Assembly (NCBI GenBank): GCA_001179505.1
Contig: CDMY01000840.1
Span: 186,001-250,000, forward strand
Reading direction: 5' to 3'
Source: Vitrella brassicaformis CCMP3155
Lineage: Eukaryota > Protista > Chromerida
DNA: 64,000 bases
Positions within the stretch are counted from its first letter, which is position 1; each line of letters starts with the position of its first letter. Under the pieces are notes generated by a model. That model saw only the letters and a list, made by a program, of their open reading frames with translations, was not told the origin of the DNA and did no database searches. Position numbers and translations under genes: made by a program. Shown here in pieces: positions 2,672 through 53,335 of the stretch.

Positions 2672-4638
2672 TCAGCATGGCGACAGGATGACCCGCTCTC
2701 CATCGTCGGGCAGCTTGTCCACTAGAGTGCGCCGCAACTTGCCACTAGATATCGAATACTCCAACAGACGATTCTAGTGGACAGCCACGCACACACACAT
2801 GACACACGGCCGTCCAGTGCGTTTGTGATGCGATGGGCGGTGTGCTCTAGATATCGCCTGGCTCCTATTCTGTTGACTCACCGTGGCTTGTCCGATGACG
2901 TAGAGAGAATCGCCGTACGACACCATGCCGGCCGGGTGGCGCAGACTCGGGTCGCTTATCACCTACACACACGATGCACGTGCCGGGCTTGCCTTTCTGC
3001 TTGTATCTCTCCACCCACCCCACCATGCGCCCACACTCAGTGACCTGTATCAGTAGGTGTGTCTGGGCTGAAAACTCATAGAGGGAGTGCCGCTTGACGC
3101 TGCCAATCCACACCGAATCCCTGGGACATACAAACACACTCACATGCCCTCCCTTGTGTGTATGCCACCCATGGCCTGCCCGCCTCACACACCTCAGCAG
3201 ACCCAACACACCTGTCGAAGCAGTAGAAGACGCTGATGGGTTTCTTGACGGGCAGCCGGCCGAGCAAGGCGCCTTGGTGGTTGTAGAGCAGCACCCCCAG
3301 GTCCTTGTTGGCCACGTACAGCACGCCATACTTGTCAAACGCCACACCACGGATGCGACCTGCACACAGAGAGAAAAAGTGCATGTCTCTGTCTGCGCGG
3401 GAGTGGTGAGTGGGTGTGTTTTCCCTCCTGTGTGCCGTGCCTTTCTTGGCCTTGAACTTGACAAAGGTCCCCGGGTCGAGCTTGCTCTCATATTCCTGCA
3501 CCCATTCAGCCAGCCACGCCACAAACACGACAATGGCATCCATCCACCACCCACATCCCATCGTAGACCCGCACTCACCTTGAGCACCGGCGCGACGGGC
3601 CCCGGCAGGCCGGTCTCCACGTCATAGCGCACCACCTCATGTGAGTTCTGGTTGCTCACGTAGAGATACCCGTCCCACTGGGCGAAGCCGTATGGGTGCC
3701 ACAGACCCTCGTTGTGCGCCGACCGCCGGGTCAGCACACGGACGTACTCGCGCTGGCCCTTGCTCTCGGGCTGACATGGACCGTACTCGACAATCTTGCT
3801 GTCCTGACAGAGAGAGAGAAAAACGACACACACAGTGTGGAGTGCAGACGAGCTGGTGTGCGATTGTCTGAGGCTTACGTACGTATCGGTATGCCTCGGC
3901 AACAAGCAGATGTCCGTCGCTGAGCATCATCCCCCGTAGCTCCCGCAGCTTGTGCGGCCCCGTCATGAGCACGGTGCCGAGGTTGCACCCGTCCCTCGCG
4001 TAGCGCACCACATTGTGCTCGTCGCCCGTCGACCCGCCGTGGAAGGTCACATACAGGTAAGGCGGGCTGTAGCACCCTCCTGGCGGCCGGACGTGCCGCA
4101 TGCCCTTCCACTGCTTCTTGCTGATCAGCTCACTGTGGAGCTCACTGTGCCCACTGTCACTGCCGAACGATGCTGCTGCCGTGAGATTGCTCCTTGACCT
4201 TGACGCCCGCATGATGCCATTGCCATTGTCATTGTCAGAGGAAGCCTCAGCAGATAAAGGCGGGTTGAGCTGATGCAGCTCCCATGGTTTGCCATCAGAC
4301 GGCTGCCAGCGCACAGAGGCCGCCGATGCAGCAACAGGAGGACCGTCATTGTTCCCCATGTGCTGCATCCTGCTGAGGGGGGGACGGAGGAACGCGATGA
4401 CGGACGCTGCGATGAGGGTGATGGAGATGAGGGCGGCCGCGATGAGCCGGGAGGGGGATACGGGCTGGTCTGCGGAGGGCAGCAGACGCGCTAAGGACGA
4501 AGATCTCATGAACGACGACATTATTGAGAGAGATCTGCGTCCTGAGAATATATTGAGCTTGCAGGAATCCCGCTCGCGGATTGGACTCATTGCAAACGAT
4601 GCTGGAAGGGACACGCGCGCGCGACTGTGTGCTGGCAT
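2672..4638 (-). CDS. Type II membrane protein with NHL/SMP-30-like beta-propeller ectodomain
   Basis: One hydrophobic helix (LIAAALISITLIAASVIAFL) followed by propeller-blade repeats: LRELRGMMLSDGHLLVAE, LWHPYGFAQWDGYLYVSNQ, IRGVAFDKYGVLYVAN, LRHPAGMVSYGDSLYVIG. Last exon ends ...RVILSPC-TGA (2672-2674). Start is ATG 4638 or 4590. Confidence 0.7.
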
Positions 4639-4766: not shown

Positions 4767-7635
4767 TCACCTGCTCGTCTTCTTGCCTCCCTTCCTGCCT
4801 CCCCCGCCAGCCCCCGACCCCCTGCCGCCCTCCTCCTTCTTCTCGCCCTCCTTCTCCCCCGTCCAGTACAACACGTACTTGATGTCACTCCCCTCGCCCC
4901 GCTCCTCCTTCTCGCGCTTCGCCCGCTCGATGAAGTCGCTGGCCTCGCTGTCCTTGGGGAACGACTCGCAGCGGCCGTCGGGAAGGCAGACGGTGATGGT
5001 GTTGTCCGGGAAGCCCGTTATGGGCGCGTCGATGAACGGCCCCTTGCGCATCCCGCGGATGACCGTCTTGCGGTACGTGCTGGCCTCCTGGGTGGTGGCG
5101 TGCGTCTCCAGTTTGCCGAGGTCTCGCTTCATGATCCATGTGGATGGGTGCGACTGGCGGCCGCGCTTGCCCTTGCCCTTGCTCTTGTGGTGCGGGGGGT
5201 GGCCGGCAGCCGATGGGGCGAGGTGCGCCGAACCTGAGACAGGGAGAAGGCAACACACACGGACAAGGGCTGTGTCAGAGAGCTGGCCGTCTGCCCCCTC
5301 TCTCTCGCTCTCTCTTTTTCCGTGCGCACCCGAGGATGAGCCGCCTGCAGCAGCAGCTGCGGCACCACTGGCACTACTGGACGCCCCCACCCCCTCCCCC
5401 GCCCCCTGCTCCGTCTCGGTGTCGCCGAACAGCTCTGTGTGGATGTCCTGTGTGAGCAGCTCGGGGGCCGGCTTGCCGCCCATGGTGTCCTCCGATGGGG
5501 TGTGGTACTGGTCTGCGAGTGAGGGGTGGCTCAGCACCTCGTCCACTGTGGGGCGAAGCTCGGGGTCCCGGTGCAACATGCCCACCAACTGGATGACAGA
5601 CACACACAGACAGCACATGGATGGATGGATGGATGATGAAGTCGTGTCTGTCTGTCTCTGTGTGTGTGCGGGGGGGGGGGGGGGGNNNNNNNNNNNNNNN
5701 NNNNNNNNNNNNNNNNNNNNNNNNNNNNNNNNNNNNNNNNNNNNNNNNNNNNNNNNNNNNNNNNNNNNNNNNNNNNNNNNNNNNNNNNNNNNNNNNNNNN
5801 NNNNNNNNNNNNNNNNNNNNNNNNNNNNNNNNNNNNNNNNNNNNNNNNNNNNNNNNNNNNNNNNNNNNNNNNNNNNNNNNNNNNNNNNNNNNNNNNNNNN
5901 NNNNNNNNNNNNNNNNNNNNNNNNNNNNNNNNNNNNNNNNNNNNNNNNNNNNNNNNNNNNNNNNNNNNNNNNNNNNNNNNNNNNNGGGGGGGGGGGGGGG
6001 GGGGGTTGCCTACAAGTCCTTTGAAGTCTCCCGGCAGGTTCTCTAGCTCCGCCAACTTGGCTACGACAAAGGGCATGTAGTTCTGCACCACACACACACA
6101 CACACACACACACGAAAACGGTGCATCTTTCCTCATCCGCGCACGACAGCGGGCCATGTGATGGCTCACGGTTGTTTCCTTGATCTTGGAGATGGCCTCC
6201 TTCCCAACCACCACCACAAACACACACGCGGCGAGCGAGAAGACATCACACTGAGACAGGGAGGGAGGGAAAACATGTATGACACACCACACAAACAAGT
6301 GCCAACACACCCACACCCACACATATATTGGATAGGGTGCATTGCATTCCACCAGCTAAACTGACCGGCTTGGCGCCACAGAAGGGCACGATGCGGTCCA
6401 TCTGCACCAGCTCGCGTGGCGAGTATCTCGAGTCTCCCTCTATGGTACGCTCTACGTCAGCCGGCACCACCCGGCCATAGTCTATCAGCACCCACGCCCC
6501 GTTCTCGACACGAACGAAGTTGTCTGAGGCAGGGAGGTCACACACACACACACAGACACACAGACAAAGGGATGGATGGACTGCCACCTGATCTTGCCTC
6601 CCTCCTGGTGCGATGGTGTGTGTAGGGATCTTACCTGGTTTGATGTCTAGGTGTGCCAGGTTGTGTGTGTGCAGGAACTTGATGGCCAGGGCACCCTGCA
6701 ACACGATGTTGGGCAACTCCTGCATATATCGGAAAAGGGGGTGTGATGCAGGGTGTGTGTGTGTGTGTGTTTCTCCCTCTCCCACACCCGCTCCCCCACC
6801 CACCGATTCTAGTATTTTCCTGGTGCAGAACTCGTCCATCATGGTGTGGCTGCCCAGCTGCATCTGAACGCAGATCTGAGTGCCGTAGTCTGCACACACA
6901 CATACACACCGACACATTAACACAGACAGACAGACAGACAGACAGATGGATGGATGGATGGATGTGTAGGGTTATGATGTCATGTCATGTCATGTCATGT
7001 CGTCTTACTTTCCAGCCAGCACGAGTTGACCTCGAGTATCTGTCGGGGGAGGTCGTCCTTCATGGCCAGCTCGGCGAGGAACTTGCCCTCACGCATCATG
7101 AACAACGCGTCACGCTCACCTGCATACCCAAAACAAACACACCATCAAAACACCACACCACAATGGATGGCACTTCCCGCCCCGCCCCGCCCCGCCCACC
7201 TTCCAGCTCCCTGGACAGCTTGACGGCGTACGGGTTCTCGCCATATTTGTCCTTCACCCTCTTGACCTCCCCATAGCTGCCCTTGCCTATCTCCATCTGA
7301 CTCCCGAAGTCCTCCTTGCACCGGCTCGGCATCCCATAGTCGTCCACATCGGCGACCTCCTCGCCCAGGATCCCATCATCCATCTCGCCGCCCATCCCAA
7401 AGTCGTCGGCGGTGGCTGCAGACGCCACAGCGGCGGCGGCCGACAGGCGGGATCTGCGGTGCTGCTGGTGGTGCTGCTGGTGCTGGTGGTGGTGGAATGG
7501 GTGATCAACGTCCATCGGGTCATCCTCAGGCTGACGGTCCTCCTCGAAATTGAACTCCGTGTTGACCTGGACCTCTCGGGCGGAACGCCGAATGCGAAGA
7601 CGGCTGGGGCTAGGAGGGGTAGGCTCATCCTCCAT
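4767..7635 (-). CDS. WEE1: Wee1/Myt1-family protein kinase (catalytically intact)
   Basis: IGKGSYGEV (Gly loop), YAVK, HLDIKPDN, IDYG, EGDSRY (Wee1/Myt1 activation-segment signature), CDVFSLA, MLHRDPELRPT; His/Gln-rich N-terminus. The 3' end may extend into a further exon. Confidence 0.8.
5686..5985. other. Assembly gap (300 N) flanked by G homopolymers, inside a kinase intron
   Basis: N run with 16 G before and 20 G after. Flanking exons join in frame (GDFKGL|LVGMLHRDP). Confidence 0.95.
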
Positions 7636-7764
7636 GTCTATCTATCGCCCTTTTCTCCTCCGAAAAGAAAACTGCGAGCCGAGAGATCCCCGCCCGGACG
7701 TCCTGGCCCTTTGGCGAGGAGATCTATCGGTGTTTTCCGGCTTATTGTAGCTTTTGTTGGCGAG

Positions 7765-10125
7765 ATGACGGATAGCAGGATTGCTCGCAACAGCAGCGAC
7801 ATGATGCCCCCTCCCGACCTCCCACTGGGGTATTCGCAGCAGCCCCAGCAGCAGGAGAACAACAACACCCAGGTGGACGAGGCGATGGGTGGCGGCGGAT
7901 ACGACATGTGCACCCCCATGGGTCATCCCCCCGTGCCACTCAACTGCTACGCCCGCAGGATGGGCCAGTCGGGCTCCGCCATGATGGAGAAGATGGACCA
8001 GAAAAAGTAAGTGTGTGACCTGACCAGCCAGCCAGCCAGGAGAGAGGAGAACGAAGAGACCACACACATCTCATCTGACCACAAACCTCATTTCTTATCT
8101 GTGTTGTGTTCAGGAAGATTCGTGAGCAGGCACGCAAGAAGGACGCCCGCGGGTTCCTCGAAGCGCCGCCGTTCCTCTTCTCGTCGACGGGCGGCTTCCG
8201 CCCCAACGACAAGCCGCCCTACGACGACGCCACCGTGCCGCGCATCGAGCGGCACTTCCGCTTAGCGGGGTGGGAGCGGTCTGTGCAGGAGCGGGTGGTG
8301 GAGGGCGTTAACTACGTGGACGGGCAGAAATACGCACTGCGCTTCATCGACAAGTTTAAAGGTCAGTGGGACGGGGAGGGTGATGGACGGGAGGACGAGA
8401 GGACGAGAGGGGGCTGGAGGTGTGGTGTGGTGTGGTGTGTGCAGGTAGCGCTGCTGTGAAGGCGTTTGGTGCGTTGGGCAGGGAGGGGAGTCGGGCGGAC
8501 TGCCCGTTTGTGATCCGCTTCTTCTCGGCGTGGGGCACTGGTAGGTCGCTCTCTGTCTGTCTGTGTGGGAGGGGAAATGTGCACATGTGTGGTGTGGGTG
8601 TGGCGCGGTGTGGTGCAGAGGACGATAGGTTGGTGCTGCAGTTCGAGCCCTATCTGCCCATCGAGAAGACCAAAGTCGCACACGACAGGATGCTTGAGGT
8701 GAAATCGACACTCTCATCCATCACACAAACACAACACACCAGCGGACGGACGGCTCGATAGTTAGCTGGATGGATGGATGGCTGTGCCTGTGTGCCTTGC
8801 GTCAGATCTTCCCGCCGATGTTTTACCAGTACCTGCACGCCCTCGTCTTCATCCACTTCCACAGCCACGTCGTAGCCAACATATGCCCAGGTCACACCAC
8901 ACCACACCACACCACACCACCCTGCACCGCACACCGATCCCCCACCTGTCAATCTGTTCCTTCTTTCCCATCAGCCCACCTCGGCATCGCCGCGAACCGC
9001 CGGGCGTCCATCATCACCGACCTGAGCCAGGCCCGCCACTTGGACTCCGGCAACTCTTCGGTGCAGTTGAGCGAGGAGGAAATGCAGTACGCTGATCCCC
9101 AGAGGAGCCCGAAGGACGGCTCCATGCGGCTCAGCTTCACACACACAGAGAAGGTGGGCTGATGGCGGGGTGGGCTGATGGTCGGGTGGGGTGCAGGGTG
9201 TTGGTGTGTTGGTGTGTTGGTGTGTTGGTATGTATGTTGGTGTGTGGTGTGGGTGTGTGTGTTGTCAGAGCGACATCTACAGTTTGGGTGCGAGTGCTTA
9301 CACCATCATTACGCAGAAGAAGCTGCCGACGGACGCGGATAAGCTCGAGGTCGGTGTGCCAGAGAAGAGAGAGAACACATGAATGAAACATCCATCTGCG
9401 GCATGTGTGGTTGCGGTTGTTGTGGTGGTCTGTATGTCAGCACGTGCACACGTCTGGCGACATCGAGAAGGACCTCAAGGCAAGCGGCAAAATCAATGAC
9501 GCCATCGTAGAGCAGGTGAGCATGACCCCTCACCCCACCCCTCCACACCTGCAGCATGGGCGAATGTAATGGCTGCAGCTGTTGCTGATGCTGCACCCGA
9601 CGCCTACGGATCGCCCCTCGGCCGAGGAGGTCCTGTACAAGCTTCGCCCCGACCTCCTCCCCCCCCGCCCCGAGCCCGTCTGCCTGCCACCCCAGACAGA
9701 GCGATACGTGCAGACGTACTGCAATGACGAAATCTGTGGCGTAGTCAAGACCAAAGGTCAGCACAGCACACAGAATGCAACACAACACACAACACAACAC
9801 ACAGATGCCTCTGGACACCCACCTGCTGCTGTCACTCACCTGCATGTGTTCATTCCATTCAGATGAGGCGAGCCCGTCGCACGGCCGCAGCCAGGCGAGC
9901 CAGATGCTGTACGACCTCCCCTGCACCCCGCAGGCCATGCGCGACCTCGCCGCCGAGATCGACCAGGACGTCGCCGACAAGGCACCCGGCGTCAACCGCG
10001 TGGTGGGCGGCGAGCGGGCCCGGCTGTTTGTGCATGAGATGGGGGGCGGGGCGGGGGCGGGGGACGGGGTGGGGGAGCCCGCCCACAAGAAGGCACACAA
10101 GGAGGGCGGCGATGGGCACAACTAG
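7765..10125 (+). CDS. Wee1-derived pseudokinase
   Basis: Ten or more exons splice in frame. DGQKYALR (K to R), VIRFFSAWGTEDDRLVLQFE (cf. Wee1 VVRYFSAWAEDDHMLIQNE), VVANICP (cf. VHMDIKP), ITDLSQA (cf. IGDLGH), FTHTEKSDIYSLG, MLHPTPTDRPSA. Ends TAG TGA TAG. Confidence 0.75.
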
Positions 10126-10575
10126 TGATAGAGGGATGGATGTGTGTGAGTGAGTGGGTGAGGGTTCGGACAGGCAGATAGAACGGCTTGGGACGGGCCA
10201 GGACGGGTGACTGACTGATTTGTTGACGACAGTGAGGGAATGGTTTGTTTACCTACCGGCCTATCACATCAACCAAACACACATGCAGCCACTGGTGTCA
10301 CGGCACGGATGGATGTGCTGGCAAAAATACAAAATACGATCGATCTCTGCACCGCGCCACACATCCGGTGGTTTCACATACACACACACATACACATACA
10401 CAAATGGCTCTGCGTCTCTTTCTCACCCACCCACACACACACACACATCATGAGCACCACCGAGTAGAGCAGAGCAACAGCAGGCAGGCCTCTCTTGCAC
10501 CAAACCAACAACAGAGCAGAGCAGCGCACCGACAGACGCCAGCAAGTGAAAAAGACACACACGTGCTGGCCTTAT

Positions 10576-13500
10576 CTAAGGTAGATGTCGGCCGTCGACA
10601 AGGGTGGCAGATTCGGTGGCCTTCCCACGCCCCTCTCTGCACCACACACATGCATGGCACAACCCACCCATAATGAAAAATGCCGCCATACACGTGTTTC
10701 TTGCCTTGATACATACCATGTGGCGTAGGCGTCTCTCTCTTGCTGGTTGGTTCATTCCTGCCCGACACTTGGCGCCTGGGTGCCAGTGGCTGCTGCCGCG
10801 GATTGGGAGGGGTGAGGGGGAGGGGCTCCATCGGCTGGGGCGACTGGGCCACCCTGCCTGTGTACACCTGCACGCACACACACAGAGAGAGAGAGATAGC
10901 TAATGCCGGTCAGGCATTCTATTCTCGCACTTTGCTGAAGACTCACTCGTTCGACCTTCATCCTGTCTCTGCTGTTCCGCCGCCTTGGCTGCTTGCTGCC
11001 AAGCCCGTTTGCATTCGCCAGCTGGCCCTGCTGCTGGTTGGGCCGCAAGTATGGCAGATAGGCCTTTCTGCACACACAGAGCCAAATGAATGAATGCAGT
11101 GTGGTCGATAAACAAATCGACATAGGTCACTTACTGCATCGGCTTGTTCCGATTGGCCCTCTGATCCCTCCCGACGGGCGGCTGGGACAGCGCGCGATGA
11201 CCCCCGCCTCCCCTGTCCCCCAAGCTGTCATTGCTGTGCGTCCTCGACTGAGCACCCGACTGCTGTCTCGACACATTTCTGCTCCCCACACCGTTAGGCT
11301 GTTGCAGCCTCTGCTGGTTGCTACCAGGGGCTGCAGGCGGCCGTCTTCTAAAGCGCTCTGGTGACCCGTCGAAAGCTATACGCGGGCGGGGGCTTGAGTG
11401 GGGTGAGGAGAGCAGCCCGGCATTGGTGGGGCGGTCGGAGACAGACAGGGGGTAGGGGCGGGGGCGGCCGCAGCGGTCTGCATGAACGTCGCGGAGAGGG
11501 GCCTGAGGAGCACCACACAGAGAAGGCGAGACGTCCAGATGTCTTTCTCTTTGCGTGCGTGTCTCCGTCTCTCACCCACCGGTGAGGGCGTGATGGACCG
11601 CTCATCGCCAGAGCAGACAGACTGGTCGGTCTGTCGCCTGACGGGCCCCCTGGTGGTCCGATCGTCCTCCACAGACACGCTCGCGGTGCTCTCATCATGC
11701 TGCTGCTGTTGCTGCTGCTGCTGCACGGGGGGCTGCCGCCGCGCACCCGGGGGCTCCGAGTGCGCCAGCTTGGAGTGACTAGCGATTCGCTGAAGACCCT
11801 TGATCTTACGAGGATCCGGCACTGGCACCTCCTTCAACTGAGACGCAGACACAGAGCCATTAATTAATGCACAGAGATCGATGGATGTGTCTGGATGAAT
11901 GGCATGGCCATTCTCACCTCTGAGTTGAGGTATGCCTCGCTCGGGTTTCGCTCCATAGTGGTCTTGGCTTCACGATTGCCGGGCGCCTGGCTGACCAGCC
12001 CCCGGGGGCTGGGCCGCTTGCGAGTGCGCGGAGACGGGACGCCTGTCGTCCACTCGGCGGTGGTCTTGCAGGGCAGGTACGATGGCGGCTTGGACGCCTC
12101 CAGCTTCTGCAGCTGCTCCGAGGACAAGAGGGCCTCTCTCTCCTTGATCATGTTGTCCCGCAGGCGGATTTGCAGACGAAGATTCTCGATCTCCAGGTCC
12201 CTTTGCTCGAGCACGGAAGCGTTCATGTTGTTGATCTCCTGCAGCTCGATGTTGCCCAGCTCCACCACATGGGCGCGGAATAGCAGCTGGAGGAAGGCGC
12301 GCATGTCGTCGTTCTTGACACGGCGCGGCAGCTCGTTCTGCAGCTTCTGCAGCTGCGCGTAGTTCTGCCTGAGCCGGTCCTCGACCTCGGCCTTCTTCTG
12401 CTGATTGCTGGCGAGGTTCTGGTTGACGTGCCTCATCCGGTCGGTGATCTGTTTGATCTCCTTGGGCGTCTCGTCACCCGCACCGTCTCTTTTGGCCTCC
12501 CACCGGGATATGGCCACCTGCGCGCGGCTCTTCTCGATCTTGTTCTCGGTGAGCAGCCTGTCCAGGTCTATGAGGTTCCGTTTGAGCTGCAGCTTCTCCT
12601 CGAAGTGCTGCATGATCTCCTGCCGCCACATCTCGGACTCAACCTGCTCCATCCGCTCGTCATGCGCACCAGCGCCGATGGGGCCGTCCAGGGCAAACGA
12701 ATGAGGCTGCTGACGTGGCACATAAGGGAAAAGGGCGACATCGGTCGGTCATCCTTCATCTCATCTGTGTGTGGTTAGCGATCTTACGTTTTCCCTCTGT
12801 GAGCTGAGTTTGGCCTTTAGCTCGGTGATCTCTGTGCGCAGCTCCTCAATGATCTTCTGGTACTTGGCAACGTGGAAGTCGACCTTCAGCACATTGCGCG
12901 TCACCTTTGTCTTGATATTCTTCGCTCTGATAGATAGATGGACGAGACACAGACAGACAGACGGACACACAGGTGGACGGAGGCCTGAGTGAGTCGAGTC
13001 GCCAGCGCCAGTCGAGCTCGGCTTGCCTGTTGGCGTATTTGAGCGTGTTGTGTGTGTCCTCAAACTGGATATGGCTGGGGCTGATGTTTGCTATCATCAC
13101 CGTCCGGCAGTTGCCGCCGAGGGAGTCTTTCAGCAATCTTGTGAGTTTGCTGTCCCGGTAGGGGATGAATGTCCCCTTGCCGTGCTTGGACCGGTCCGCC
13201 AGGGCGTTGATGACGTTACCAAGCGCCAGCAGAGAGCGGTTGATGTTGGCCCCCTCGATCATTCGGATGCCGCGATTGTTGGTCTGAGAGGCTCGTTCGC
13301 TGCCCGCCAGGTCTATCATGCTCAGCTTGCCAACATGGAACCTGCAAAAGGCACCCAAAGCCGATACATACAGCACACTCAATGCTCGTTGTGCCATCCA
13401 TGCTCACTTGGCCTGCACGCCTTGGCCCTTCTCCTTCTCTTGCACTGTCACTTGCAGCACTGCATGTGACCGGGAACTGGTCTGGTTGGCGTCAGTGGGC

Positions 13501-14607
13501 TCCTGCGTCCGATTGCGATTGCCCGCCAACAAGAGGTCCATGACCTCGGCTGCACTGTCAGCGCTGAACTCGGAAATGCCTGCGACAGTGATGCCCTTGA
13601 CGGGGTCCTCTCGCACATCGAGGTAGTCGGATGACGGCTGCAGGAGGTCTCGGATGTTCTCGTTGTATATCTCAAGGAAGCTGCACTTGACCTCGAAGCC
13701 ACGCTCGTCGGTCTGTGAGTCCATCTGGGAGAAGAGGTCCTGCAGCGTCATGTACATGATGCCCGGCTCCTTGTAAGATCCCAGCATCGTGAAGGTCTTG
13801 CCAGCACCTGCAAATAAATGACTCCCCATGACGTACGTATACAGTGGTGCGGGCGGCACTGCCTGTCTCCGTGTCTCTGTCGGTCTACGTACCTGTTGCC
13901 CCATAAGCGAAGACAGTTGCGTTGAATCCCTGCAGGACTCCGCTGATGAGGAAGTTGGTCGTGTTGTTGTACACTGTCCGCTGCGGAGTCGTCTCGTCAA
14001 AGACATGATCAAACGCATACCTACGCAGCCACCGACACACAAAAAGATAGACAAACATCAATCACATTGATGGAATGACCGCCTTCTTGATTGTCTCCTC
14101 ACCGTTTCTCCTTGGACCGGTTTTGCCTCAGCGCGTCGAGCACCGGCTGTCCGTGCTGATCTATCTGCCCTTGTGAAGGGTCGATGAGTATCACCACTTT
14201 CCCGTCAATGATCCGCACCGCATGCTTCACGCCCTCCCTCACCTCCCGTGGCTGCAGCGGCCGGCACCGAACAGCCACCAGCACGTTTGACTGACCCTTG
14301 CCCAGCTCGTCAACGTACTCATCTGCACCAATATACCCAACAGTGAAGCAAAGCACAAATGATACTGACAGCGAGACGCTCAGTGAGCCTTGTTGGTCGT
14401 CTCACCTGTTTCAATATCGCCGCTGGCCCCGTCAGGCTGCCATTCTCCGTGCTCGTCCGGTAAGGGACTGTCATTGCGAGGCTGCGAGTCGCTGCTACAT
14501 GGCCGCTGCAGCATGGGAGAGGCGCCCTGCGGCAGCGCCTTGCCCTGCTTGGACTTGCTCTTCCACGGGACCTTCCTCCTCTCTTCGGTGTCCGGGTCAC
14601 TCACCAT
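10576..14607 (-). CDS. Kinesin-8 family (KIF18/KIF19-like) motor protein
   Basis: VAVRCRP, YAFDHVF, FAYGAT|GAGKTFTM (P-loop), [61 protein letters not shown], followed by coiled coil and a low-complexity tail. The 3' end is approximate. Confidence 0.9.
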
Positions 14608-33859: not shown

Positions 33860-34159
33860 NNNNNNNNNNNNNNNNNNNNNNNNNNNNNNNNNNNNNNNNN
33901 NNNNNNNNNNNNNNNNNNNNNNNNNNNNNNNNNNNNNNNNNNNNNNNNNNNNNNNNNNNNNNNNNNNNNNNNNNNNNNNNNNNNNNNNNNNNNNNNNNNN
34001 NNNNNNNNNNNNNNNNNNNNNNNNNNNNNNNNNNNNNNNNNNNNNNNNNNNNNNNNNNNNNNNNNNNNNNNNNNNNNNNNNNNNNNNNNNNNNNNNNNNN
34101 NNNNNNNNNNNNNNNNNNNNNNNNNNNNNNNNNNNNNNNNNNNNNNNNNNNNNNNNNNN
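33860..34159. other. Assembly gap (300 N)
   Basis: N run followed by a C-rich tract. Confidence 0.95.
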
Positions 34160-49907: not shown

Positions 49908-52613
49908 ATGCAGCCACAAACGTCGCCGCGTGTGTACGAGTGCAGCCAGCCCACTCAGGTACGCCTGTGTGCGCGCAGCGACGACATGGTGTGTGTTGTC
50001 TGTGGTTTGTTGTGGTCAGCAATACGAGATCCCAGATGTGCCCGAGGAGGAGCCGCCTGCAAATCCTATGCTCTCCGCCCACGATGTGGTGGCGAAACTG
50101 GTACGCACAGATCAGACAGATCATACTTATCAAACGCCCACCCAGACTGGTCCTTCTGCTGTGTGGTGTCAGGAGAAGCTTGACCTCAACGATAGCTACG
50201 GCGCGTACGAGTGGCGTTCGAGCGTGCTTCACGAGGACCAGTCCGACGAGGCGGCCATCGCCATCGGACGGGCGGCGCAGTGCGACCTCCGCATCAGCGA
50301 CAACCGCGTGTCGGGTACGCCAATAGGGGAGAGCAGTCACTGCTTGCACAACCGCAGTAGTGGATGGATGGATGTGTGTGTGTGTGGTTTGGTTTGGTTT
50401 GGTTTGGTTGGTGCCAGGTTGCCATGTGAGGATTCGGTGGAATAGGGGCCTGCGGCAGTTCCACATATGCGACTCCTCGTCCAACGGCACATGTGTGTGA
50501 CGTGATGCGAGGAGGACTCTGCACCTGCACCCCACTCCCCTCACTCCACTCTGTATACTGACTGATTGGTCGGTCAGGGGTGGACAATGGTCGGCAGTGT
50601 GAGTCTGGCGAGAGGTTTGTGAGGCTCCCGAAGGGCCAGTGGATGCCGCTCAAACACAACCAGTGCATCAGCCTCGTGGTAGGTGCTGGCTTGCCATGCC
50701 GTCAATACACACATCCGTATGTTGTGGCGTGGTGTGATTTGGTGTGATTTGGTGTGGTGTCTGTGCAGGTGCCCTTCCCTGAGTACGACCGGGGCGTCTG
50801 GGATGCCGGTACACACACACACAGACACGCACACACGCGCATTCACTTACGCGAAGCCTCTGTGGTGGATGGATGGGTGCATTGGTGCTCGTGTGATGTG
50901 GTGCTGTGGTGGCTGGTGTAGAGTGCAAGATTCTGGAGGCAAAGAAGAAGGAGGACAAGAGCATCAACAGGCGCGCCACTCCCTGTAAGCTCACCGGCCA
51001 GACAGACACACAGGCAGGCAGGCAGTCAGGCAGACAGGCAGCCGCGTATGTATGTGTGTGTGTGTGTGTGTGCCAATGTATACCACCCCATCAGTCATCG
51101 GCGCGTGGCAGTTTGTGCTCAAGGAGCAGTTGCAGGCCTACAGCTCCGCCATGGGGGTAACTCACTCACCGAGGCCACGCCACACACCCACACCCACACC
51201 CACACCCACAGCCCAGTGTGTCTATGCGCGGTGCGGATACACTCAGGACAAGATCAATGACAAGTACGACAAGAAGTGTCCCATCGGCAGCGGCAACTTC
51301 TCGCAGGTCTACCTCGCATTCAGAAAGAAAGATGGACTCAAGTACGCCCGCCACCTCTCACCTAACACACCCACACCGCACCCCCACACACACAGACACC
51401 CACCCATGGTCTACCCGCCGCTTGTCTTGTGTGCAGGGTTGCCATCAAGGCCATCGACACGAAGCGCTTCGAAAAGTTCAGAGCCAAGAAGAAATCCAAC
51501 CTCGACATAGAATCGGAAGTGCTGGTAAGGCAGGCCCGGCCCACAAACGTACACTTCCTCACACCACACGGCTCCCTCCATCCACCACCCATTGAATGTC
51601 TAATGCATCCATCAGACGCTGTCGAGTCTGAAGCACGAGAACATTCTCAAGTTCATCGAGTGTGTGCGCGAGGAGGACATTATCTACCTCGTCACGGAAA
51701 TGTGCGTGCACACACGCATGCAGCCAGACAGGCAGACAGCCAGCGCACATACGTGACGCCTTGGTCTCGTGTGTCGTTTTGCTTTTGTGCTTGGCAGTCT
51801 TGACGGCGGCGACTTGTTGGAGTATTGCCTAGCCCATGAGCGTGTCGAGGTAAGAGACAGACAGGGAGGGAGGGAGGGAGGGAGGGAAGGAGGGAAAGGC
51901 GAGCGGCCGGCCAATCAACCACGCCTCTCTCTCGCTGTGTGTGTGTGTGTGTGTGTGTGTGCAGGAGGAGCTGGCCAAGTTGTGGTTCAAAGGCATCGCA
52001 GAGGGGGTCAAGTACCTCCACACCAAGGGCATCGTCCACAGAGACCTCAAGGTCACCTCACCTCACCCACAGCACAGCACCGCACAGGACAGCAAGGACC
52101 ACAGGACAGCAAGGACCGCTCTCTCTTCAATCTGGCTGTCGTATGCATGTGTGTGTGTGTCAGCCCGAGAACATTTTGTTGACGGACAAGACCATCTTTG
52201 GCGTTCCCAAGATTGCCGACTTCGGCCTGGCCACGTAAGCAACCCACGCCACCGAACCTAACCCAGAGGCGCACTGCACAGGAGGGGTGTGTGGTGTGTG
52301 TGTGCGTGCGGGTCAGGGTGAGGCAAGCCGAGTCGTCCTTGAAGACCCTCTGCGGCACGCCGCACTACTATGGTACGTGTGTGGGGTGTGTGGGGGGTGT
52401 GGGGTGTGTGCGTATGTGTAGGTTTGTGTGTGTCACCTCCTGTCTGTCTGATGCGATGCGACGCAGCCCCTGAGCTGATTGACACGCAGAAGAAGAGGGT
52501 GGACGGCTACGGTCCTGAGGTGGACATTTGGTCGCTGGGGTGCATCCTCTACATCATGTATGTGTGTCAGCACCGTCACTAGCACACACAGAGAGAGAGC
52601 CAGCTGTATCCCC

Positions 52614-52648
<35 letters not shown>

Positions 52649-53335
52649 TGTGTGTGCCAGGTTGTCGGGCAATCCTCCTTTTGAGGACGATGGCCTCTAC
52701 TGGCAGATCCAGAATGCCATATACACCGTCGACGGTGGTGTATGGGATCACATCTCAGAAGAAGGTCCGTTCGGGGTTTTGTTTTGTGGGTGGTGGGTGG
52801 CTGGGGAGAGGGCGACACTCACACACTGTGGGCCTCTGTCTGTCTGTGTGCAGGCAAGGACCTGGTGACCAAGATGATGTGCGTCGACCCCAAGCAGCGC
52901 ATCACCATCGACGCCATCCTCTCGCACCCCTGGGTCCTCTCAGCCACCGACGCCATGAACCACCTCCTCAACCTGCGCCCACCACACACACACCCCTCCT
53001 ACACCCGCCCCAACGACTATGACCCCTTCCCCTCCCCCCGACCACCACAGCTTCAGCCCCCCGCCAAGCGTCCCGCCCCCGCACCACCAAACAATGACAT
53101 GCCGCCCCCTCCAGTGCCCTTCGCACTACGAGCAGCGGCAGCAGCAGATGGCGGCCGGACCGACAACACGGAGCGGGACGTGTCGACGGCCGAGTCGTCG
53201 GGCAATGCCGGCAGGGCCAAGCGCCGCAAACAGGGGGAGAGTGAGGGCGCGTCATCGGCGGCGGCTGCCGCTGCTGCTGCTGCTGGGGGTGGTGGTGGTG
53301 GTGGGGAGGGAGAGGGGCCAAACGAGAAGGCGTGA
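49908..53335 (+). CDS. CHEK2: Chk2/Cds1/Rad53-like FHA-domain Ser/Thr kinase
   Basis: N-terminal SQ/TQ sites (SQPTQ, TPTQ), FHA domain (IGRAAQCD..ISDNRVSGCH, DSSSNGT), kinase IGSGNFSQV, VAIK, HRDLKPEN, KIADFG, TLCGTPHYYAPE, DIWSLG, LSGNPPF, DPKQRITI..HPW. Confidence 0.88.

What the first reader, a model, noticed from the sequence alone, without database searches (positions are those of the whole stretch)
4767..10125. Head-to-head Wee1-like kinase / Wee1-derived pseudokinase pair on a 129-bp spacer
Seen in sequence: the minus-strand kinase (ATG 7635) has all catalytic motifs. The plus-strand gene (ATG 7765) splices cleanly with no stops but has lost the Gly loop, has beta3 K to R (YALR, 8331-8342), has catalytic loop HxDIKP to VANICP (8872-8889), and has EGDxRY to EEEMQY. 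It still tracks human WEE1 closely elsewhere (VIRFFSAWGTEDDRLVLQFE, DLS for DLG, FTHTEKSDIYSLG). Established: Wee1/Myt1 kinases inhibit CDK1, and pseudokinases often act as scaffolds or allosteric regulators of related kinases. Inference: a co-transcribed kinase-pseudokinase module controlling the G2/M switch; I am not aware of such a Wee1 pseudokinase partner being described.
Basis: partly seen in the sequence, partly recalled or inferred. Interest (0 to 1): 0.85.

Follow-up and report, generated by a model that had tools for sequence, protein, structure and literature searches.

The report
Wee1-like kinase beside its dead twin
In the alga Vitrella brassicaformis, two back-to-back expressed genes are ancient copies of one Wee1/Myt1-like cell-cycle kinase gene; one copy keeps every catalytic residue and the other has lost most of them, and whether the two proteins work together is untested.

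Summary
The window is Vitrella brassicaformis contig CDMY01000840.1. The minus gene (ATG 7635, 583 aa, CEM35071.1) is an intact protein kinase. The plus gene (ATG 7765, 508 aa, CEM35073.1) has a kinase fold but lacks the Gly loop and carries beta3 K->R, alphaC E->A and HLDIKPDN->VANICPAH. All motif coordinates and the 129-bp spacer check out.

Spliced RNA contigs from two studies confirm every plus-gene intron and the minus-gene kinase exons. They also place the N gap (5686-5985) inside a minus-gene intron, with no hidden exon.

New here: all seven kinase-domain introns of the two genes sit at identical positions with identical phases (1,1,0,1,0,0,0). A third kinase gene in the same window shares none of its nine. 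So the pair is an inverted duplication.

Wee1/Myt1 ancestry is probable, not proven. Human WEE1 is the pseudokinase's best solved-structure match (E 6e-5). The active copy keeps EGDSRY, and its best database relative is a clear Wee1/Myt1 kinase. Margins are thin and a six-row tree was inconclusive.

No orthologue of either gene was found anywhere. The "G2/M module" idea is untested, and short spacers are normal in this compact genome. Interest is moderate.

The parts
4767..7635 (-). Active Wee1/Myt1-like kinase gene (CEM35071.1, P0002, 583 aa). Exons: 7200-7635, 7009-7119, 6804-6889, 6635-6719, 6366-6523, 6170-6250, 6014-6082, 5330-5588, 4767-5233.
   Evidence: GT-AG model. Equals database protein P0002. 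Pfam Pkinase E 6.4e-26. Spliced RNA contig X1 record 2 covers 5452-7647.
7765..10125 (+). Pseudokinase paralogue gene (CEM35073.1, P0001, 508 aa). Exons: 7765-8006, 8114-8361, 8445-8540, 8619-8698, 8806-8890, 8975-9153, 9269-9349, 9441-9515, 9579-9756, 9863-10125.
   Evidence: GT-AG model identical to P0001. All 9 junctions appear in spliced RNA contigs of runs X1, X2 and X8 and are absent from DNA run X3. Pfam Pkinase E 6.6e-7, 29.4 bits, just under the 31.7 cut-off.
7636..7764 (.). 129-bp spacer between the two start codons, a presumed shared bidirectional promoter. Observed transcript ends are 7647 (minus gene) and 7713 (plus gene).
5686..5985 (.). Assembly gap (N run) flanked by G homopolymers. 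It lies inside minus-gene intron 7 (5589-6013).
   Evidence: Phase 0 on both sides and collinear protein. The RNA contig length arithmetic leaves no room for another exon. DNA contigs of X3 also break there.
6411..6440 (-). EGDSRYSPRE activation-segment / P+1 motif of the active copy, of the EGDxRY type seen in Wee1/Myt1 kinases.
   Evidence: Aligns to EGDSRF of WEE1/WEE2 and to EEGDSRYM / EEGDCRYM of P0003 and P0004.
6636..6653 (-). Catalytic loop HLDIKP(DN) of the active copy. A phase-1 intron follows the Pro codon.
8872..8889 (+). Degenerate catalytic loop VANICP(AH) of the pseudokinase (H->V, D->N, K->C, N->H). A phase-1 intron follows the Pro codon at the same place as in the active copy.
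8331..8342 (+). YALR: the beta3 Lys is replaced by Arg. The upstream Gly-loop position reads AGWERSVQ (8265-8288) and lacks the GxGxxG glycines.
8510..8647 (+). VIRFFSAWGT | (E)DDRLVLQFE, a Wee1-type beta4-beta5 motif split by an intron. It is better kept in the dead copy than in the active one (SCWLENYGTQICVQMQ).
   Evidence: Aligns to VVRYFSAWAEDDHMLIQNE of human WEE1 and to IVRYHQAWME..LYIQTE / VVRYYTSWVE..VYIQNE of P0003 and P0004.
9016..9102 (+). TDLS (DFG/DLG position, Asp kept, Gly->Ser) through EEEMQYADPQ (degenerate EGDxRYxxxE).

Best explanation
The locus is an old head-to-head (inverted) duplication of one intron-bearing kinase gene, most probably of the Wee1/Myt1 family.

The minus copy keeps the Gly loop, beta3 Lys, alphaC Glu, HxDxKPxN, DxG and the EGDxRY activation-segment signature. 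It is most likely an active CDK-inhibitory kinase (inferred).

The plus copy has lost the Gly loop, beta3 Lys (Arg), alphaC Glu (Ala), the catalytic Asp (Asn), and the catalytic-loop Lys and Asn. It keeps the structural skeleton: alphaE His, DFG Asp, alphaF Asp in SDIYSLG, and the Arg of DRPS. It also keeps an open 508-codon frame, exact splicing, expression and strong codon bias. It is therefore a maintained pseudokinase, not a decaying pseudogene.

Shown here: the gene models, transcription, loss of catalytic residues, and paralogy.

Inferred: Wee1/Myt1 family (about 0.65); no phosphotransfer by the plus protein (about 0.85).

The likeliest role of the pseudokinase is non-catalytic binding in the same pathway. 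It could act as an allosteric partner of its active twin, or as a decoy or scaffold for the CDK-cyclin substrate. This is about 0.25-0.3 likely and entirely untested.
For: - Models and identity to database proteins.
- Spliced RNA contigs for both genes in runs of two studies, with no such joints in the DNA run.
- Seven of seven kinase-domain introns sit at the same offset from anchor motifs and have the same phases, 1,1,0,1,0,0,0. Two of the six internal kinase-domain exon pairs have equal lengths (85/85 and 81/81 nt); the other four differ by 5-21 nt (111/96, 86/80, 158/179, 69/75).
- A CAMK-like kinase gene in the same window (51277-52936) shares 0 of its 9 introns exactly.
- Pairwise BLAST of the two proteins is collinear over the C-lobe, 21% identity, E 0.001.
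- P0001 against solved structures: WEE1 is top at E 6e-5 (25.6 bits), then WEE2 at 0.008, with the next ordinary kinase, PknB, at 0.04. PKR, PERK and GCN2 are absent.
- P0002's best relative in 5.8 billion proteins is P0003 (75 bits), which is itself an unambiguous Wee1/Myt1 kinase (WEE1 3e-42, PKMYT1 1e-41, next GCN2 4e-21).
- The P0002 C-lobe alone ranks WEE1 first and PKMYT1 third.
- A two-sequence Wee1-like profile beats a CAMKK-like profile by about 22-23 bits for both proteins.
- Coding constraint on the dead copy: GC3 is 0.855 against intron GC of 0.56, and 0 of 20000 shuffles of the CDS are stop-free.
- The AF2 model has a kinase fold (pTM 0.72). All Foldseek hits are kinases, with WEE1 at ranks 2, 3 and 5 and the highest identity.
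Against: - Full-length P0002 hits CDPK1 (52.9 bits) slightly above PKMYT1 (51.2) and WEE1 (46.4). Its N-lobe gives CDPK1 about equal to PKMYT1, and the C-lobe margin over SNRK is 0.2 bit.
- P0001 is below Pfam's gathering score, and its AF2 N-lobe is poorly modelled.
- The six-row tree puts both on the Wee1-like side (94/94, not starred) but does not resolve them as sisters. It rejects neither sisterhood (p-AU 0.09) nor a CAMK-side placement of P0001 (p-AU 0.11).
- No orthologue of either gene was found, so selection (dN/dS) and conserved linkage could not be measured.
- There are no data on protein level, interaction, nucleotide binding or cell-cycle timing.
- A 130-bp spacer is ordinary in this contig.
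Confidence: 0.6

Rival explanations
1. The two genes are true paralogues, but adjacency is only the scar of the duplication. The pseudokinase has drifted to an unrelated non-catalytic job and does not regulate its neighbour or CDK.
For: The proteins are only about 21% identical, so there has been ample time for neofunctionalisation. Their N- and C-terminal extensions are unrelated. Short intergenic spacers are the norm here. Earlier scan notes list several other pseudokinases in this genome.
Against: Both are present in the same RNA libraries. The pseudokinase keeps Wee1-type surface motifs in the C-lobe (FTHTEKSDIYSLG, MLHPTPTDRPS) that are not needed merely for folding.
Confidence: 0.4
2. 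The pair belongs to a lineage-specific 'Other'-group kinase family that only resembles Wee1/Myt1. The EGDxRY and SAW..EDD motifs would be convergent or shared with neighbouring families such as PEK.
For: The margins over CDPK1 and SNRK are thin for the active copy. The tree is inconclusive. There is no orthologue chain to canonical Wee1 in Chromera or apicomplexans.
Against: WEE1 is the top solved-structure hit for the dead copy, with no PEK kinase listed at all. The best database relative of the active copy is a clear Wee1/Myt1 kinase. Both proteins prefer the Wee1-like profile by about 22 bits.
Confidence: 0.25
3. The plus protein is not dead. It retains nucleotide binding and some non-canonical catalysis, as WNK, CASK and SelO do.
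For: The DFG Asp is kept (TDLS), and beta3 carries Arg, which can still contact phosphates.
Against: Five catalytic positions are lost together: the Gly loop, the alphaC Glu, and the catalytic Asp, Lys and Asn. No known rescue pattern is visible.
Confidence: 0.1
4. The plus gene is a transcribed relic evolving neutrally.
For: No orthologue and no population data are available, so purifying selection was not measured directly.
Against: It has a 508-codon open frame across 10 exons, all with intact GT-AG sites. None of 20000 composition-matched shuffles stays open. GC3 of 0.855 equals that of its active neighbour. A spliced full-length mRNA contig exists.
Confidence: 0.05

Closest known systems
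Human WEE1 / WEE2 and PKMYT1 (WEE family, CDK1 Tyr15/Thr14 kinases)
   Same: These are the best solved-structure matches of the dead copy (WEE1) and the joint-best of the active copy. The active copy shares a Ser/Thr-type catalytic loop H(L/M)D(I/V)KPxN and EGDxRY. The dead copy shares the RFFSAW..EDD.L.LQ.E, DL(G/S) and THxxKxDI(F/Y)(A/S)L motifs.
   Different: Identity is only about 20-27%. The active copy has DYG instead of DLG/DFG and a divergent beta4-beta5. The terminal extensions have no detectable homology. The substrate is untested.
FAM20A / FAM20C (a pseudokinase paralogue that binds and activates its active paralogue); my knowledge, not tested here
   Same: A duplicated kinase in which one copy lost catalysis.
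   Different: A different fold family, a secretory-pathway location, and genes that are not adjacent. Binding is demonstrated there but not here.
Toxoplasma ROP5 / ROP18 (alveolate pseudokinase paralogues that regulate an active family member); my knowledge
   Same: An alveolate lineage with a locally duplicated kinase family that has dead members acting as regulators.
   Different: A secreted, host-directed ROPK family in large tandem arrays. It is not a cell-cycle kinase and not a two-gene head-to-head pair.
BUB1 / BUBR1 (a cell-cycle kinase duplicated, with one copy repeatedly becoming a pseudokinase); my knowledge
   Same: A mitotic-control kinase gene duplicated, with catalytic decay of one copy while the fold is retained.
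   Different: A different kinase family. The copies are unlinked, and a well-studied division of labour exists there.

Membership tests
Eukaryotic protein kinase fold (Pfam PF00069) | Significant, collinear match to the Pkinase profile | tested here: met
   Minus: E 6.4e-26, profile 4-261 of 263. Plus: E 6.6e-7, profile 15-258, 29.4 bits against a 31.7 cut-off. In addition, every Foldseek hit of the AF2 model is a kinase at probability 1.0.
WEE family (Wee1/Myt1) | H(L/M)D(I/V)KPxN catalytic loop with intact catalytic Asp | tested here: met
   The minus copy has HLDIKPDN. The plus copy has VANICPAH, so this is not met there; that is what makes it a pseudokinase.
WEE family (Wee1/Myt1) | EGDxR(Y/F) motif in the activation segment / P+1 region | tested here: met
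   The minus copy's EGDSRYSPRE aligns to WEE1/WEE2 EGDSRF and to P0003/P0004 EEGD(S/C)RYM. The plus copy has only the remnant EEEMQYADPQ.
WEE family (Wee1/Myt1) | Nearest relatives in sequence databases are WEE-family kinases, by a clear margin | tested here: inconclusive
   Plus: WEE1 is top, 9.6 bits above the next ordinary kinase, PknB (CFAP251, 19.1 bits, ranks second). Minus: the best hit in the big database is a WEE-family kinase (75 bits against 52 for a CAMKK-like hit). In the PDB, however, CDPK1 is about equal to PKMYT1 and above WEE1. For the C-lobe alone, WEE1 is first by 0.2 bit.
WEE family (Wee1/Myt1) | Placement inside the WEE clade in a kinome phylogeny | tested here: inconclusive
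   Only six rows could be assembled. Both fall on the Wee1-like side at 94/94, which is not starred, and the AU tests reject nothing.
WEE family (Wee1/Myt1) | Phosphorylates CDK1-type kinases on Tyr15 and/or Thr14 | not testable with these tools
   This needs a biochemical assay.
Pseudokinase (kinase fold lacking at least one of beta3 Lys, catalytic Asp, DFG Asp) | Loss of beta3 Lys and of the catalytic-loop Asp in an otherwise kinase-like domain | tested here: met
   Plus copy: YALR (K->R) and VANICP (D->N), with the DFG Asp retained in TDLS. The Gly loop and alphaC Glu are also lost.
Paralogous pair from a local duplication | Shared derived gene structure not found in other kinases of the genome | tested here: met
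   7/7 intron positions and phases are identical. A third kinase gene in the same window shares 0/9. This control is a single gene.

The most novel reading that the evidence does not exclude
The dead copy is a dedicated regulator of the CDK inhibitory-phosphorylation switch. It would be a Wee1-derived pseudokinase that binds either its active twin or CDK-cyclin and so tunes mitotic entry. This would sit in a lineage (Myzozoa) where canonical Wee1, Myt1 and Cdc25 are reported missing from the parasitic members (PMC6157590, PMC3025120). The pair could then serve as a stepping stone for finding the unidentified functional homologues in apicomplexans.
Probability: 0.2. Interest if true: 0.7.

Novelty: new member of a known kind. 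Interest (0 to 1): 0.4.

Why it matters
Kinase/pseudokinase paralogue pairs are a well-known way of building regulators, but I found no description of one derived from the Wee1/Myt1 family (literature).

[quoted passage not shown] A very divergent Wee1-like pair in their free-living relative gives a concrete candidate for how that control layer diverged.

The locus is also a clean textbook case. Intron positions prove paralogy where protein similarity (21%) alone barely can. The limits are that both genes are so far Vitrella-only and nothing functional is known.

Tried and rejected
1. Exon-by-exon Pfam and PDB searches by reference. The pieces were too short. The minus pieces gave only weak Pkinase/WEE hits and the plus pieces gave nothing.

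2. The joined spliced models were built only inside scripts, to check frames and for one local BLAST. They were never sent to a search tool. The joined search step was replaced by the database's own records, P0001 and P0002, which the piece-wise searches retrieved.

3. Orthologue hunts all returned nothing useful:
- 1.84 billion representatives, searched with a 130-aa piece: self only.
- 5.8 billion proteins, searched with full P0001: self only.
- The same database searched with the P0002 kinase domain: three distant kinases.
- JGI metagenome contigs searched with both proteins: nothing, or one unrelated kinase fragment, L004.
So dN/dS and synteny could not be done.

4. MAFFT pairwise alignment of the two kinase domains misaligns the N-lobe. 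It was not used as a profile; intron comparison was anchored on motifs instead.

5. The Wee1-like gene of P0006 is intronless, so it gives no intron comparison with a canonical family member.

6. The six-row ML tree and AU tests were inconclusive.

7. ESM Atlas look-alikes were generic kinases, with plant Wee1 and Myt1 clusters among the structural neighbours of both proteins. These are leads only.

8. Papers were searched for the two accessions and none was found.


Full report
WHAT IS THERE

The window is nuclear DNA of the chromerid alga Vitrella brassicaformis CCMP3155 (contig CDMY01000840.1, GCA_001179505.1). I built both gene models from the sequence, using canonical GT-AG introns.

The minus gene runs from ATG 7635 to the stop at 4767. 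The plus gene runs from ATG 7765 to the stop at 10125 and has ten exons.

The joined models existed only inside scripts, for frame checks and one local BLAST. They were never sent to a search tool.

The piece-wise searches retrieved the database's own records:
- P0001 (508 aa, CEM35073.1 / A0A0G4GVT8) is letter-for-letter my plus model.
- P0002 (583 aa, CEM35071.1 / A0A0G4GVW3) is my minus model minus one further 96-nt GT-AG intron at 5234-5329.

All later searches used these ids.

THE GAP (tested first, as asked)

The N run 5686-5985 is flanked by G homopolymers. The exon on its high side ends at 6014 and the exon on its low side starts at 5588; both are in phase 0. The junction reads GDFKGL|LVGMLHRDPELRP. 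This is residue-for-residue collinear with human WEE1 FTELLKVMIHPDPERRP.

An RNA-derived contig (run X1, record 2, 1175 nt) matches 5452-5588. It then carries exactly 150 letters, the summed length of the next two exons (69 + 81). It then matches 6366-6523, then 288 letters (85 + 86 + 111 + 6), then 7206-7647.

So the gap sits in an intron and hides no exon. DNA contigs of run X3 also break there, so the gap itself remains unread.

TRANSCRIPTION

Three runs from two studies (X1, X2, X8) hold spliced contigs, and the DNA run X3 holds none of these joints.

A 1740-nt contig of X8 covers the plus mRNA from 7713 to beyond 10200. Eight of the nine plus-gene junctions are listed directly as joints with GT..AG ends; the ninth (8890|8975) follows from contiguous record coordinates.

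The minus mRNA contig ends at 7647. The observed transcript ends are therefore 65 bp apart, which fits a bidirectional promoter.

Contigs cannot rank expression, so co-expression beyond 'both present in the same libraries' is not shown. The C-terminal 130 aa of the minus protein are covered by separate contigs (4840-5202). They are not bridged to the kinase part across the low-complexity stretch 5195-5451.

CATALYTIC STATUS

The minus protein is a complete kinase (Pfam Pkinase E 6.4e-26). It has GKGSYGEV, YAVK, an alphaC Glu, HLDIKPDN, DYG, EGDSRYSPRE, the alphaF Asp and the subdomain-XI Arg.

The plus protein matches the same profile end to end, but weakly (E 6.6e-7, 29.4 bits against a 31.7 cut-off). 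Its status position by position:
- Gly loop: no glycines (AGWERSVQ).
- beta3: YALR (K->R, 8331-8342).
- alphaC Glu position: Ala.
- Catalytic loop: VANICPAH for HLDIKPDN (8872-8889 plus the next exon).
- DxG position: TDLS.
- EGDxRY position: EEEMQYADPQ.
- Retained: the alphaE His, the DFG Asp, SDIYSLG and DRPS.

An AlphaFold2 model of residues 105-400 with a 7-row alignment has pTM 0.72 and mean pLDDT 62. Its C-lobe is confident and its N-lobe is poor. All 500 Foldseek hits are kinases. By the usual definition this is a pseudokinase.

IT IS MAINTAINED, NOT DECAYING

The plus gene has 508 open codons across ten exons. None of 20000 composition-matched shuffles is stop-free. GC3 is 0.855, compared with 0.817 in the active neighbour and 0.56 GC in its own introns.

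THE TWO GENES ARE DUPLICATES (new evidence)

Protein similarity alone is marginal. BLAST gives 21% identity over 172 C-lobe residues at E 0.001, and phmmer gives only 5-6 bits.

The gene structures, however, are the same. Each of the seven introns inside the kinase domain lies at the same offset from a conserved anchor, and in the same phase, in both genes:
- 7 residues after the beta3 K/R, phase 1.
- 3 residues after the W of SCW/SAW, phase 1.
- 2 residues before LPNI/FPPM, phase 0.
- Right after the P of IKP/ICP, phase 1.
- Right before CDVFSL/SDIYSL, phase 0.
- 27 codons after that, phase 0.
- 4 residues before MLH, phase 0.

Internal exon lengths are 111/96, 86/80, 85/85, 158/179, 81/81 and 69/75 nt.

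As a control, I modelled a third kinase gene found in the same window (CAMK-like, + strand, 51277-52936). It has nine kinase-domain introns and none coincides exactly. Three lie 1-3 codons away from the pair's introns.

Identical structure plus adjacency in inverted orientation means a local inverted duplication of an already intron-bearing gene. The 21% identity means the duplication is old, or that one or both copies evolved fast.

WHICH FAMILY

For the dead copy, human WEE1 is the best solved-structure match (E 6e-5, 25.6 bits over residues 181-379). WEE2 follows at 0.008. The next ordinary kinase, PknB, is at 0.04, and no PEK-family kinase is listed at all.

For the active copy, the best relative in the 5.8-billion-protein collection is P0003 (75 bits). 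P0003 is itself an unambiguous Wee1/Myt1 kinase: WEE1 3e-42, PKMYT1 1e-41, next GCN2 4e-21. The second hit, P0004, also carries GDLGH and EEGDCRYMAPE. The third, P0005, is CAMKK/AMPK-like.

Against solved structures the full active copy gives CDPK1 52.9, PKMYT1 51.2 and WEE1 46.4 bits. Its C-lobe gives WEE1 39.7, SNRK 39.5 and PKMYT1 37.8. Its N-lobe gives CDPK1 22.6 and PKMYT1 21.8.

A small local test with a two-sequence Wee1-like profile against a CAMKK-like profile gave 66.6 against 44.0 bits for P0002, and 25.2 against 1.8 bits for P0001. An intact non-Wee1 kinase (P0005) scores 24.0 on the Wee1-like profile.

A six-row ML tree puts both proteins on the Wee1-like side (94/94, not starred). 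It resolves nothing else, and its AU tests reject neither sisterhood nor a CAMK-side placement.

My reading is Wee1/Myt1 ancestry at about 0.65. The two copies have kept complementary parts of the ancestral signature: the active one the catalytic machinery and EGDxRY, the dead one the beta4-beta5 and C-lobe motifs.

DISTRIBUTION

No orthologue of either protein was found. The searches covered 1.84 billion cluster representatives (with a 130-aa piece), the 5.8-billion collection (which includes EukProt), and JGI metagenome contigs. Both proteins are singletons in their 90% clusters.

HOW IT MOST LIKELY WORKS

Shown: a duplicated pair with one active-type and one dead-type copy, both expressed from a shared 129-bp space between start codons.

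Inferred from family knowledge: the active copy phosphorylates CDK on the Gly-loop Thr/Tyr, and the dead copy cannot transfer phosphate.

Speculative: the dead copy acts by binding, either to its twin (as FAM20A does to FAM20C, or ROP5 to ROP18) or to CDK-cyclin as a decoy or scaffold. I give a pathway-linked role about 0.25-0.3. I give about 0.4 to a role in which adjacency is merely historical. The short spacer carries little weight, because neighbouring genes on this contig are 130-680 bp apart. Another head-to-head pair with a 60-bp spacer was also noted nearby by the scan.

LITERATURE

Reviews state that apicomplexans lack recognisable Wee1/Myt1 and Cdc25. [quoted passage not shown]

Kinome papers for Giardia and Stentor list active Wee kinases only. 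Searches combining Wee1 with pseudokinase found no description of a Wee-family pseudokinase. The two accessions appear in no searchable paper. Absence from this library is not proof of absence.

VERDICT

This is a new, lineage-restricted instance of a known evolutionary pattern (a kinase plus a dead paralogue), probably in the Wee1/Myt1 family. Its function is unknown. Interest is moderate (0.4).

Noticed in passing
window 51277-52936 (+): A third protein-kinase gene, CAMK-like (GSGNFSQVY, VAIK, HRDLKPEN, DFG, GTPHYYAPE, DIWSLG), with nine short introns in the kinase domain. It was used here only as the control for intron positions.
   Followed up: partly
window 4767-5233 (-): The C-terminal ~130 aa of the active kinase (STWIMKRDLGKLE...IKYVLYW) has no Pfam match and no homologue in the 5.8-billion collection. 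RNA contigs cover it (4840-5202) but do not bridge the low-complexity stretch 5195-5451 to the kinase exons, so its attachment to the kinase rests on the open frame and the public annotation.
   Followed up: partly
window 5676-5685 and 5986-6006; also 33860-34159: G homopolymers flank the assembly gap, and Logan DNA contigs break at the same place. This probably explains the gap. A second 300-N gap lies at 33860-34159.
   Followed up: no
window 8380-8563, 8748-8931, 9668-9851, 6172-6355: Intronic simple repeats ((GTGTGG)n, (GGAT)n, (CA)n) recur across the genome. They produce very high contig depth and many false long-range 'joints' in the read-laying output, and the same motifs occur in introns of both genes.
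   Followed up: no
accessions CEM35071.1 and CEM35073.1: The two products are numbered two apart. CEM35072.1 may be an alternative product of one of the genes. It was not retrievable here.
   Followed up: no
window ~10572-14607 (-) and ~2672-4521 (-): The flanking genes in the public annotation are a 1051-aa kinesin (PF00225) downstream of the pseudokinase and a 441-aa protein with no Pfam hit downstream of the kinase. Intergenic spacers are 130-680 bp, which shows how compact this contig is.
   Followed up: no
L002 3001-5016 / L003 2674-4689: The nearest bona fide Wee1/Myt1-like relative (P0006/P0003) is an intronless gene on metagenome scaffolds, next to ArfGap, ribosomal L31e and VPS9 genes. 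The organism is unknown.
   Followed up: no
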